A stretch of 64,000 nucleotides of DNA from Macrostomum lignano (lineage: Eukaryota). The stretch covers positions 1 through 64,000 of the forward strand of contig NIVC01001342.1 of the NCBI GenBank assembly GCA_002269645.1. The letters are read 5' to 3'. Positions 37,334-37,800 of the stretch are shown piece after piece. The notes under the pieces were generated by a model. It searched no databases, had not been told where the DNA came from, and worked only from the letters and a program-made list of their open reading frames with translations. Numbering within the stretch: the stretch's first letter is position 1; each line of letters begins with the position of its first letter. A program made the position numbers and the translations under genes.

Positions 37334-37341
37334 TATAAATA
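37334..37341 (+). promoter_or_regulatory. TATA box of the secreted peptide gene
   Basis: TATAAATA about 150 bp upstream of the ATG at 37482, followed by a plausible TSS about 30 nt downstream. Confidence 0.6.
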
Positions 37342-37481
37342 CAAGCGGCGGACTGAGGCGACGGTGCAAGCCAGCAGCCACTTAGCAACTCAGCAAGCAC
37401 CGACCAGAGGCCCTACAGAATAAAAGTCCGCATCGGTTCTGCAGCATTCCACTACTCACCGCATCAACACCTCTACTCAAG

Positions 37482-37691
37482 ATGATGAAGGCTCTCTGCG
37501 TCTGCCTGCTGGTTCTGCTGGCCGTGTCTGTGAACTCTACTGACGCCTGCGGTGGCGGCGACCGGTCCTGCGGCGGCACCTGCTACAGCCCGAGGACGCA
37601 CACTTGCATCAATGGCTACTTCCTGTGCCCGGTCGGTCATCGCAAGTGCGGCACGCACTGCTACAATCCCCGCATGTACCGCTGCACCTGA
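37482..37691 (+). CDS. Secreted cysteine-rich cationic peptide (69 aa; CBM52-like tandem CGxxCYxP motif)
   Basis: MMKALCVCLLVLLAVSVNSTDA (signal-peptide-like) + CGGGDRSCGGTCYSPRTHTCINGYFLCPVGHRKCGTHCYNPRMYRCT*. GC-rich codon usage like the other host exons; upstream TATA box and downstream AATAAA. Confidence 0.85.
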   Translation: MMKALCVCLLVLLAVSVNSTDACGGGDRSCGGTCYSPRTHTCINGYFLCPVGHRKCGTHCYNPRMYRCT

Positions 37692-37794
37692 GCGCTCGCT
37701 GACTGACCCGGGCGGCTCTCACCTGATCAGAGGCTGAACGATGCATCATCCATTTCAGTTTTATGGTTTTAATTGTCAATTAATTTGGTACCAA

Positions 37795-37800
37795 AATAAA
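37795..37800 (+). terminator. Polyadenylation signal AATAAA of the peptide gene
   Basis: AATAAA 104 nt after the stop codon in an AT-rich 3' UTR. Confidence 0.6.

What the first reader, a model, noticed from the sequence alone, without database searches (positions are those of the whole stretch)
37334..37800. Compact intronless gene for a secreted 8-Cys cationic peptide resembling the fungal CBM52 beta-1,3-glucan-binding module
Seen: TATA box, 22-aa signal-like leader, 47-aa mature peptide with two repeats of C-x6-C-x3-C-x7-C (CGGGDRSCGGTCYSPRTHTC / CPVGHRKCGTHCYNPRMYRC) linked by INGYFL, net charge about +5, and AATAAA. Established (from memory): CBM52 of fission-yeast Eng1 glucanase has the pattern CG..xY.P..Y.C...FLCP...CG..CY.P..Y.C and binds beta-1,3-glucan. 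Inference: a stand-alone CBM52-like peptide in an animal could be an undescribed antifungal/anti-algal pattern-recognition or antimicrobial peptide, or a mucus/adhesion component, possibly horizontally acquired.
Basis: partly seen in the sequence, partly recalled or inferred. Interest (0 to 1): 0.72.

Follow-up and report, generated by a model that had tools for sequence, protein, structure and literature searches.

The report
Flatworm secreted CBM52-type cysteine-rich peptide
A small intronless gene of the flatworm Macrostomum lignano encodes a secreted, positively charged 47-residue peptide that is a single copy of a sugar-binding module (CBM52) best known from fungal cell-wall enzymes, which is a plausible but untested defence or glucan-binding factor.

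Summary
ORF 37482-37691 (+) encodes a 69-aa precursor: a 22-aa signal-like leader plus a 47-aa, 8-Cys mature peptide with net charge +5. The peptide is two C-x6-C-x3-C-x7-C half-units joined by INGYFL.

It matches Pfam PF10645 (Carb_bind, CBM52) at 36.3 bits against a cut-off of 25, E 6.6e-9. An exhaustive search found 195 relatives, and 106 of 149 scanned also match PF10645.

The window is Macrostomum lignano contig NIVC01001342.1. Three near-identical genomic copies exist. One copy is a GenBank gene model built only from RNA-seq, so transcription is indirectly supported. GC3 is 0.83, like neighbouring host genes, so it is neither contamination nor a recent import.

The family is not fungus-specific. 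Relatives occur in a tardigrade, a bdelloid rotifer, chytrids, rumen fungi and an Acrasis-like amoeba. They overlap the galaxin-like and IGFL Pfam repeats.

AlphaFold2 gives a confident stack of three beta-hairpins (pLDDT 96) with no solved counterpart. Cysteine co-loss predicts 1-3 and 2-4 disulfides in each half-unit.

Beta-1,3-glucan binding, antimicrobial action and horizontal origin remain untested inferences. Verdict: a real new animal member of a known module family, of moderate interest.

The parts
37243..37247 (+). Inverted CCAAT element (ATTGG), a possible promoter element
   Evidence: Read directly from the sequence. It lies 87 nt upstream of the TATA-like box. Not tested.
37334..37341 (+). 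TATA-like box TATAAATA
   Evidence: 7 copies in the window against 0.67 expected. This one is 148 nt upstream of the ATG in a GC-rich stretch. Its function is inferred.
37365..37481 (+). Inferred 5' UTR, assuming a start site about 30 nt after the TATA-like box
   Evidence: Inference. A pyrimidine-rich tract ending in AG lies directly before the ATG, so spliced-leader trans-splicing is also possible. Many M. lignano mRNAs are trans-spliced (PMC5730564).
37482..37691 (+). Complete intronless CDS: 69 codons plus stop
   Evidence: Identical protein P0001 is called on two M. lignano contigs. GC3 is 0.83.
37482..37547 (+). Signal-like leader, residues 1-22 (MMKALCVCLLVLLAVSVNSTDA)
   Evidence: Hydropathy profile. 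An 87%-identical leader-coding block is reused by the neighbouring gene at 40194-40144 on the minus strand.
37548..37607 (+). Half-unit 1, C23-C42 (CGGGDRSCGGTCYSPRTHTC)
   Evidence: AlphaFold2 places beta strands here. Predicted disulfides are C23-C34 and C30-C42, from Cys co-loss statistics.
37608..37625 (+). Linker INGYFL, with the conserved G and the L that precedes the CP motif
   Evidence: Alignment A1 consensus CxxGxxLCP.
37626..37685 (+). Half-unit 2, C49-C68 (CPVGHRKCGTHCYNPRMYRC)
   Evidence: Predicted disulfides are C49-C60 and C56-C68.
37566..37688 (+). Stretch matched by Pfam PF10645 Carb_bind (residues 29-69, profile positions 1-45 of 49)
   Evidence: 36.3 bits against a gathering cut-off of 25, E 6.6e-9.
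37692..37800 (+). 3' UTR up to the AATAAA at 37795-37800
   Evidence: The blocks 37683-37699 and 37716-37747 are 91-94% identical to the 3' end of the neighbouring minus-strand gene.
39625..40194 (-). Neighbouring inverted paralogue-like gene or pseudogene
   Evidence: It shares the leader and the stop plus 3' UTR blocks with the CBM52 gene but has a different, frame-broken middle. The stop after the leader and a second frame change are present in all three genomic copies. No Pfam match.

Best explanation
This is a genuine, expressed Macrostomum lignano gene for a secreted mini-protein. The mini-protein is one complete CBM52-type module (Pfam PF10645). After removal of a signal peptide of about 22 aa, the 47-aa product folds into a stack of three short beta-hairpins. 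These are built from two tandem 4-Cys half-units, each probably stapled by Cys1-Cys3 and Cys2-Cys4 disulfides. The fold displays the family's conserved tyrosines (the CY-x-P and Y-x-C motifs). By homology with the Schizosaccharomyces pombe Eng1 CBM52 repeats and with fungal secreted CBM52 glucan-binding proteins, it most likely binds beta-1,3-glucan chains. It has no catalytic partner and is unusually cationic for the family. It would therefore act as a small lectin-like defence or recognition peptide that coats glucan-bearing surfaces such as fungal walls or algal glucans. Shown here: gene anatomy, family membership, host origin, copy number, a confident fold prediction and indirect transcript support. 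Inferred: cleavage site, disulfide map, ligand and biological role.
For: PF10645 match above the curated cut-off. The exhaustive phmmer search gave 195 hits at E<=1e-3, with single-unit scores of 40-47 bits. Of 149 hits, 106 match PF10645, and some carry GH81, GH16, CBM96, ricin-B or legume-lectin domains. All consensus positions of alignment A1 are kept. AlphaFold2 gives pLDDT 96.2 with six short strands. Cys1 and Cys3 are present together in 431 half-units and absent together in 74, with 72 discordant, Fisher p 1.6e-44. Net charge is +5 against a family mean of -1.0 (sd 2.6), and only 1.4% of 370 units reach +5. The host contig is 310 kb, with three copies showing no substitutions over 1.2 kb. 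GC3 is host-like. The GenBank model BOX15_Mlig018268g3 comes from an RNA-seq-only annotation. From the literature, Eng1 has three CBM52 modules and its C-terminal region binds beta-1,3-glucan (PMC9609564, PMC7388972). The Magnaporthe oryzae protein GBP is a signal peptide plus CBM52 (bioRxiv 10.1101/2025.07.03.663104).
Against: No binding, expression-site or phenotype data exist for this peptide. No CBM52 structure or ligand-contact map exists against which to check binding residues. The Pfam profile also overlaps galaxin-like and IGFL repeats, whose known roles are not glucan binding. In the tardigrade and rotifer the units form long arrays in astacin-type or membrane-anchored proteins, where they may serve only as a structural scaffold. 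The exact protein was found only on the genome-assembly contigs, not on assemblies of public sequencing runs. The gene identifier was not found in the three supplementary data sets searched.
Confidence: 0.5

Rival explanations
1. It is a charge-driven antimicrobial peptide of the galaxin type. It kills or restrains bacteria through its cationic, disulfide-stabilised hairpins, and specific glucan recognition plays no part.
For: Homologues found with this peptide (P0077, P0146) match Pfam Galaxin_repeat at 72-82 bits. P0146 also passes PF10645 and IGFL on overlapping residues, so the repeat types are related. Squid galaxins are cationic (+5 to +21.5) and single-repeat peptides from them inhibit bacteria (PMC12773714). 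This peptide's +5 charge is exceptional within its family.
Against: The peptide itself gives no Galaxin_repeat hit even at E<=10, and only 11 bits to IGFL. It has the CBM52 spacing with the LCP-x-G linker, not the di-cysteine galaxin spacing. The squid peptides needed 50-300 uM for activity.
Confidence: 0.2
2. It is a feeding or digestive accessory. A gut or pharyngeal gland secretes it and it binds the beta-1,3-glucan storage polymer (chrysolaminarin) or surfaces of the diatoms the worm eats, helping capture or glucanase action.
For: Family annotation as a beta-1,3-glucan binder. Relatives are fused to glucanases: GH81, GH16 and the Piromyces ConA-like glucanase. The animal and protist carriers found here (tardigrade, bdelloid rotifer, Acrasis-like amoeba) are micro-grazers. 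That M. lignano is cultured on diatoms is from my own knowledge.
Against: No glucanase gene lies next to it in the window. There are no tissue-expression data. A free single module has no obvious catalytic benefit.
Confidence: 0.1
3. The module is used as a generic disulfide-rich scaffold with no glycan ligand. The peptide would be a signalling ligand (IGFL-like), a reproductive or seminal-fluid peptide, or a mucus or adhesive component.
For: There is overlap with IGFL and with long structural arrays in tardigrade astacin and rotifer membrane proteins. The neighbouring gene reuses the same leader and 3' UTR around an unrelated middle, a pattern typical of fast-evolving secreted-peptide families.
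Against: The aromatic and proline positions typical of the carbohydrate-binding members are all retained. There is no evidence for any receptor or tissue.
Confidence: 0.15
4. It is not a functional gene, being either a contaminant or a decaying horizontally acquired fragment that is not translated.
For: One assembly copy carries a frameshift (P0002). A broken paralogue lies 2.5 kb away.
Against: The frameshift is a single missing G in a GG run, among other homopolymer indels typical of long-read assembly error. Two copies are intact. The codon-position GC signal is strong and host-like. The gene sits in a 310-kb host contig beside host genes and host repeats. An RNA-seq-derived gene model exists.
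Confidence: 0.05

Closest known systems
CBM52 modules of Schizosaccharomyces pombe endo-beta-1,3-glucanase Eng1 (Pfam PF10645 Carb_bind)
   Same: It matches the same profile above threshold. It shares the core motif CG-x2-C-Y-x-P-x4-C ... LCP-x-G-x3-CG-x2-CY-x-P-x2-Y-x-C. Both are extracellular.
   Different: Eng1 has three modules appended to a GH81 catalytic domain (PMC9609564). Here a single module stands alone. The fungal-type first half-unit usually lacks Cys1 and Cys3, giving 6 Cys, whereas this peptide has both half-units complete, giving 8 Cys. This peptide is strongly cationic. Binding has been shown only for Eng1.
Fungal secreted non-catalytic CBM52 proteins, such as Magnaporthe oryzae GBP MGG_05232
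   Same: Both are a signal peptide plus CBM52 with no enzyme domain. Many short secreted homologues of 100-130 aa appear in the hit list.
   Different: GBP is larger (residues beyond 148 are cited) and is a wall-associated protein of the fungus itself. The flatworm has no glucan wall, so any target must be foreign.
Multi-repeat CBM52-type proteins of other micro-animals: Hypsibius exemplaris OWA54156.1 and OQV15023.1, and Adineta ricciae CAF1132197.1
   Same: Same repeat unit, in animal genomes. P0003 is the top hit (E 7e-44, 17 matched stretches). PF10645 passes threshold in P0003 and P0015.
   Different: Those are proteins of 660-970 aa with 12-17 units. They are fused to an astacin protease or end in a hydrophobic C-terminal stretch. 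Single-unit similarity to the flatworm peptide is only 19-33 bits.
Galaxin-like repeats (PF24748) and the IGFL family (PF14653)
   Same: Related Cys-rich unit CG-x2-C-Y-x-P-x4-C. Some homologues pass two or three of these profiles on the same residues. Squid galaxins are cationic and their single repeats are antibacterial (PMC12773714).
   Different: Galaxin units end in a di-cysteine and use a different spacing. This peptide gives no Galaxin_repeat hit and only 11 bits to IGFL.
Hevein-like antimicrobial peptides (CBM18) and tachycitin (CBM14). This is a functional analogy recalled from my own knowledge.
   Same: Small, stand-alone, disulfide-rich carbohydrate-binding modules of 30-75 aa that act as antifungal or antimicrobial peptides.
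   Different: Unrelated folds and a different ligand (chitin). No homology was tested or expected.

Membership tests
CBM52 / Pfam PF10645 Carb_bind | Significant match to the family profile above the curated gathering score | tested here: met
   36.3 bits against a cut-off of 25, E 6.6e-9, residues 29-69 on profile positions 1-45 of 49.
CBM52 / Pfam PF10645 Carb_bind | Homologues retrieved with the peptide are themselves family members | tested here: met
   106 of 149 best hits match PF10645 at E<=1e-4. One carries GH81 N- and C-terminal domains, as Eng1 does.
CBM52 / Pfam PF10645 Carb_bind | Conserved Cys framework and the aromatic and proline motif CG-x2-CY-x-P ... LCP-x-G ... CG-x2-CY-x-P-x2-Y-x-C | tested here: met
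   All invariant and nearly invariant columns of alignment A1 are present: C9, C13, Y14, C21, C28, C35, C39, Y40, P42 and C47.
CBM52 / Pfam PF10645 Carb_bind | Binding to beta-1,3-glucan | not testable with these tools
   Known only for S. pombe Eng1 (PMC7388972). This needs a biochemical assay.
CBM52 / Pfam PF10645 Carb_bind | Fold matching an experimentally solved family member | not testable with these tools
   No solved relative was found by sequence or by Foldseek with the pLDDT-96 model.
CBM52 / Pfam PF10645 Carb_bind | Attachment to a glycoside hydrolase, the classical context of a carbohydrate-binding module | tested here: not met
   The ORF is only a leader plus one module. This is not strictly defining, because fungal stand-alone CBM52 proteins exist.
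Galaxin-like repeats (PF24748) | Match to the Galaxin_repeat profile and tandem units ending in a di-cysteine | tested here: not met
   No hit at E<=10 and no CC motif in the peptide. Only some distant homologues match.
IGFL family (PF14653) | Match to the IGFL profile above its cut-off of 25 bits | tested here: not met
   11.1 bits, E 0.43.
   GC3 is 0.83, the same as host ORFs at 0.83-0.91. The best single-unit hits tie at 45-47 bits across unnamed environmental eukaryotes, an Acrasis-like amoeba and fungus-like sequences. Other animals carry the module. Other flatworms could not be searched.

The most novel reading that the evidence does not exclude
The peptide would be the first animal stand-alone CBM52-type pattern-recognition or antimicrobial peptide. 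On this reading a flatworm uses one 5-kDa glucan-binding module, made cationic, to recognise and attack fungal or algal surfaces. Fungal CBM52, invertebrate galaxins and vertebrate IGFL would then be one ancient superfamily of disulfide-stapled hairpin repeats whose ancestral job is binding microbial glycans.
Probability: 0.17. Interest if true: 0.7.

Novelty: new member of a known kind. Interest (0 to 1): 0.45.

Why it matters
CBM52 is catalogued and discussed as a fungal module. All 18 papers in the searchable library that mention it concern fungi or CAZyme inventories. Here it appears in a bilaterian as a complete gene product on its own, in the smallest possible form, with an atypical positive charge.

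If the peptide binds beta-1,3-glucan, it would be a minimal, easily synthesised probe for that polymer. It would also be a new kind of invertebrate recognition or defence peptide, in a model flatworm where RNAi and transgenesis are available.

The overlap found here between CBM52, galaxin-like and IGFL repeats suggests a testable idea for galaxins, whose biochemical function is still debated. That idea is glycan binding.

If the peptide does not bind glucan, it is simply one more small cysteine-rich secreted peptide.

Tried and rejected
- **Word-indexed homologue search.** The peptide alone gave 2 candidates and the 50-unit alignment gave 30. This was too insensitive for a 48-aa Cys-rich unit, so the exhaustive search was needed.
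- **PDB by sequence, single and profile.** Nothing relevant; Septin-2 at E 0.23 is chance.
- **Foldseek against PDB and BFVD.** No match at E<=0.001.
- **Expression data.** 'Mlig018268' is absent from main texts and from the supplements of three M. lignano papers.
- **Source organisms of the sequencing-run hits.** The run accessions of these hits appear in no paper in the library.
- **Prokaryotic distribution.** Two degenerate DNA patterns for the 4-Cys double unit found nothing in 185,579 bacterial and archaeal genomes. The pattern matches only 11% of the eukaryotic homologues. Two hits (P0080, P0090) look bacterial, with 2-Cys units, a lipobox and a Fib_succ_major domain. Absence from prokaryotes is therefore not established.
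- **Contamination.** Rejected.
- **Frameshifted GenBank protein P0002 as evidence of pseudogenisation.** Rejected as a likely homopolymer assembly error.
- **The neighbouring gene as a beta-trefoil lectin.** My first impression from its sequence; there is no Pfam support.
- **Rfam scan of the window.** No hits.

Full report
**1. Observation**

A TATAAATA box lies at 37334-37341. An ORF runs from 37482 to 37691 on the + strand. An AATAAA lies at 37795-37800.

The ORF encodes MMKALCVCLLVLLAVSVNSTDA|CGGGDRSCGGTCYSPRTHTC-INGYFL-CPVGHRKCGTHCYNPRMYRC-T. The leader has a basic residue, a 12-residue hydrophobic core and small residues at -3/-1. The mature 47-mer has 8 Cys in two C-x6-C-x3-C-x7-C units, with 10 of 20 positions identical between them. 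Its mass is 5.19 kDa, its pI 8.9 and its net charge about +5.

The coding signal is strong. GC at codon positions 1/2/3 is 0.49/0.57/0.83, while the flanks are 0.38-0.45 GC. TATAAATA is rare in the window (7 copies, 0.67 expected). AATAAA is common (59 copies) and is weak evidence alone.

**2. Source and copies**

The identical protein is called on GCA_002269645.1 contig NIVC01001342.1 at record position 37482. The window is therefore bases 1-64000 of that 310-kb contig of the Macrostomum lignano Mlig_3_7 assembly.

A second intact copy lies on NIVC01004792.1. A third lies on NIVC01005137.1, and its product is the GenBank protein BOX15_Mlig018268g3.

Over 1.2 kb centred on the gene, the three copies differ only by single-base homopolymer indels, with no substitutions. 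The 'frameshifted' GenBank protein comes from one missing G in the GG at 37635-37636. This is most simply a long-read assembly error.

Further out, the copies diverge to 94-97% identity and differ in repeat-array length. They are therefore separate loci or haplotypes, not one sequence assembled three times.

Neighbouring ORFs are a Ribosomal_L10-family exon, a 7tm_1-like ORF and a gypsy-type retrotransposon. Their GC3 is 0.83-0.91, the same bias as this gene. Contamination is excluded, and a recent un-ameliorated transfer is unlikely.

**3. Transcript support**

The GenBank annotation of Mlig_3_7 was produced only from RNA-seq-based transcript assemblies. These used StringTie and TACO, a de novo transcriptome, and boundaries set by trans-splicing and poly(A) reads. 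Near-identical transcripts share a name prefix (PMC5730564).

The existence of Mlig018268 'g3' therefore indicates a transcript. It also fits three near-identical copies named g1-g3. This evidence is indirect.

I found the identifier in no paper or held supplement. The exact protein was seen only on the genome-assembly contigs.

**4. Family**

The precursor matches Pfam PF10645 (Carb_bind, the CBM52 module) at 36.3 bits. The gathering score is 25, the E-value is 6.6e-9, and residues 29-69 cover profile positions 1-45 of 49. The weak hits to IGFL, Nodulin_late and ATE_N are below threshold.

An exhaustive phmmer search of 1.84 billion representative proteins with the mature peptide gave 195 hits at E<=1e-3 and 39 at E<=1e-10. 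The very low E-values of the top hits come from summing up to 17 repeats. The best single units score 40-47 bits at 40-58% identity.

Of the 149 best hits, 106 match PF10645 at E<=1e-4. Co-occurring domains are listed below.

| Co-occurring domain | Hits |
|---|---|
| CBM96 | 5 |
| Fasciclin | 4 |
| Astacin | 2 |
| GH81 (N- and C-terminal domains, the Eng1 architecture) | 1 |
| GH16 | 1 |
| Ricin-B lectin | 1 |
| Legume lectin | 1 |

A 50-unit alignment gives the consensus xCxxxxxxCGxxCYxPxxxxCxxGxxLCPxGxxxCGxxCYxPxxYxC. The flatworm peptide keeps every conserved column.

**5. Distribution**

Named homologues are as follows.

| Organism | Group | Protein features |
|---|---|---|
| Hypsibius exemplaris | tardigrade | 664 aa, 12-17 units |
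| Hypsibius exemplaris | tardigrade | 966-aa astacin-type protein, 12 units |
| Adineta ricciae | bdelloid rotifer | 766 aa, hydrophobic C-terminal stretch |
| Chytriomyces hyalinus | chytrid fungus | 846 aa, six PF10645 stretches |
| Piromyces finnis | rumen fungus | ConA-like lectin/glucanase |
| EukProt protist | unnamed protist | name not given |

One of the closest single-unit relatives, P0017 (45 bits), sits on a 130-kb metagenome contig. That contig's Ca-ATPase is 62% identical to the Acrasis kona enzyme and about 50% identical to those of Naegleria and Willaertia, which points to a heterolobosean amoeba.

The module is therefore widely but patchily spread among eukaryotes. It is not fungus-specific.

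Strict DNA patterns for the 4-Cys double unit found nothing in 185,579 prokaryotic genomes, but the pattern catches only 11% of the known homologues. Two hits with 2-Cys units look bacterial, with a lipobox and a Fib_succ_major domain.

No lineage stands out as sister to the flatworm unit, so horizontal origin cannot be decided.

**6. Link to galaxin and IGFL repeats**

Six hits match Pfam Galaxin_repeat (best E 4e-23) and five match IGFL (best E 5e-15). P0146 passes the gathering scores of Galaxin_repeat (82 bits), Carb_bind (44 bits) and IGFL (43 bits) on overlapping residues.

The three Pfam families thus describe variants of one unit, CG-x2-(C)-Y-x-P-x4-C. They differ mainly in where the extra cysteines sit.

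The flatworm peptide has the CBM52 spacing and gives no Galaxin_repeat hit.

This link matters for function. Squid galaxins are cationic, and single-repeat peptides from them inhibit bacteria (PMC12773714).

**7. Structure**

AlphaFold2 run with the 50-unit alignment gives mean pLDDT 96.2. It shows six short strands that form three hairpins.

No solved structure resembles it by sequence or by Foldseek. This is consistent with CBM52 having no experimental structure.

Across 577 half-units in the homologues, Cys1 and Cys3 are present together in 431 and absent together in 74. They are discordant in 72, giving an odds ratio of 56 and p 1.6e-44. Four of the six full-length double-unit rows (189 examined) that lack Cys5 or Cys7 lack both.

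This predicts Cys1-Cys3 and Cys2-Cys4 bridges in each half-unit. In precursor numbering these are C23-C34, C30-C42, C49-C60 and C56-C68. The typical fungal first half-unit lacks the 1-3 pair, while the flatworm peptide has both half-units complete.

**8. Function**

What is shown is a secreted-type, single-module member of PF10645.

What is inferred is beta-1,3-glucan binding. The inference rests on homology with Eng1, whose C-terminal CBM52 region binds beta-1,3-glucan chains (PMC9609564, PMC7388972). It also rests on the secreted M. oryzae CBM52 protein GBP and on the carbohydrate-related partners of the module in other organisms.

The flatworm unit is an outlier in charge. It carries +5 against a family mean of -1.0 (sd 2.6), and only 1.4% of 370 units reach +5. 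Together with its stand-alone form and the galaxin precedent, this favours a defence or recognition peptide.

Alternatives are a purely charge-driven antimicrobial peptide, a feeding accessory for diatom glucan, or a scaffold peptide with another ligand. None can be separated without experiments.

**9. Neighbour**

On the minus strand at 40194-39625 lies a gene-like unit. Its leader coding sequence is 87% identical over 53 nt to that of the CBM52 gene. Its last codons, stop and 3' UTR blocks are also shared. Its middle is unrelated and has no Pfam match.

A stop follows the leader and there is a second frame change. Both are present in all three genomic copies, so they are real. A 35-nt GT...AG interval could remove the first stop, but nothing repairs the second.

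This is probably a decayed or chimeric paralogue. It shows that the leader and UTR cassette has been duplicated locally.

**10. Verdict**

The gene is a real host gene that is probably expressed. It is a new animal, stand-alone, cationic member of a known module family.

Its ligand, role and evolutionary origin remain open. Interest is moderate.

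Noticed in passing
window 18078-35057: A 17-kb tandem array of about 730 copies of a 21/22-nt unit (TCTCTACAGCTCAACAGCATCA). It has 82% matches, 12% indels and an extreme strand asymmetry (GC skew about -0.6). It ends 2.3 kb upstream of the peptide gene. The 21-nt period could encode a 7-aa repeat, but the frames are broken and ORF 17926-19374 has no Pfam match.
   Followed up: partly
window 36077-36467: A second array of a 22-nt unit (GACCCTGATCCCTTCATCCACG), 17.7 copies. 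Its alignment to the other two genomic copies is offset, which indicates copy-number differences.
   Followed up: partly
window 39625-40194 (minus strand): A gene-like unit reuses the peptide gene's leader and its stop plus 3' UTR blocks around an unrelated, frame-broken middle. The disruptions are shared by all three genomic copies, and the L002 copy has a further 12-nt deletion and two more indels.
   Followed up: partly
proteins P0146, P0077, P0080, P0090 (homologues, not in the window): Pfam Carb_bind (CBM52), Galaxin_repeat and IGFL match overlapping residues of the same proteins above their gathering scores, which implies one superfamily of CG-x2-C-Y-x-P-x4-C units. P0080 and P0090 look bacterial, with 2-Cys units, a lipobox and a Fib_succ_major domain.
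   Followed up: partly
window 38043-38103 and 38133-38193: A direct repeat of about 61 nt with two copies 90 nt apart in the AT-rich region just downstream of the gene's poly(A) signal. Read.
   Followed up: no
window about 51242-54553 (minus strand): Gypsy-type LTR retrotransposon ORFs: reverse transcriptase, RNase H, integrase zinc-binding domain, aspartyl protease and gag zinc knuckle. Only the domain content was noted.
   Followed up: no
window 49178-49500, 61456-61605 and 1665-1925: Short in-frame tandem repeats inside long GC-rich ORFs with no Pfam match: the 30-nt unit VGHREHGLGA and the 21-nt units CIVGGLR and ACGAKMS.
   Followed up: no
window 16481-17443 (+) and 47444-48175 (+): Host gene fragments flank the locus: a sub-threshold rhodopsin-type 7tm_1 ORF (21.6 bits against a cut-off of 30.5) and a Ribosomal_L10/RL10P_insert exon with an acidic tail. 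Both have GC3 of 0.86-0.91.
   Followed up: partly
locus L004 (JGI metagenome 3300062347, contig Ga0606064_0022): A 130-kb environmental eukaryotic contig carries a 333-aa protein with three CBM52-type units. Its Ca-ATPase is closest to that of Acrasis kona (62% identity), which suggests an uncultured heterolobosean amoeba.
   Followed up: partly
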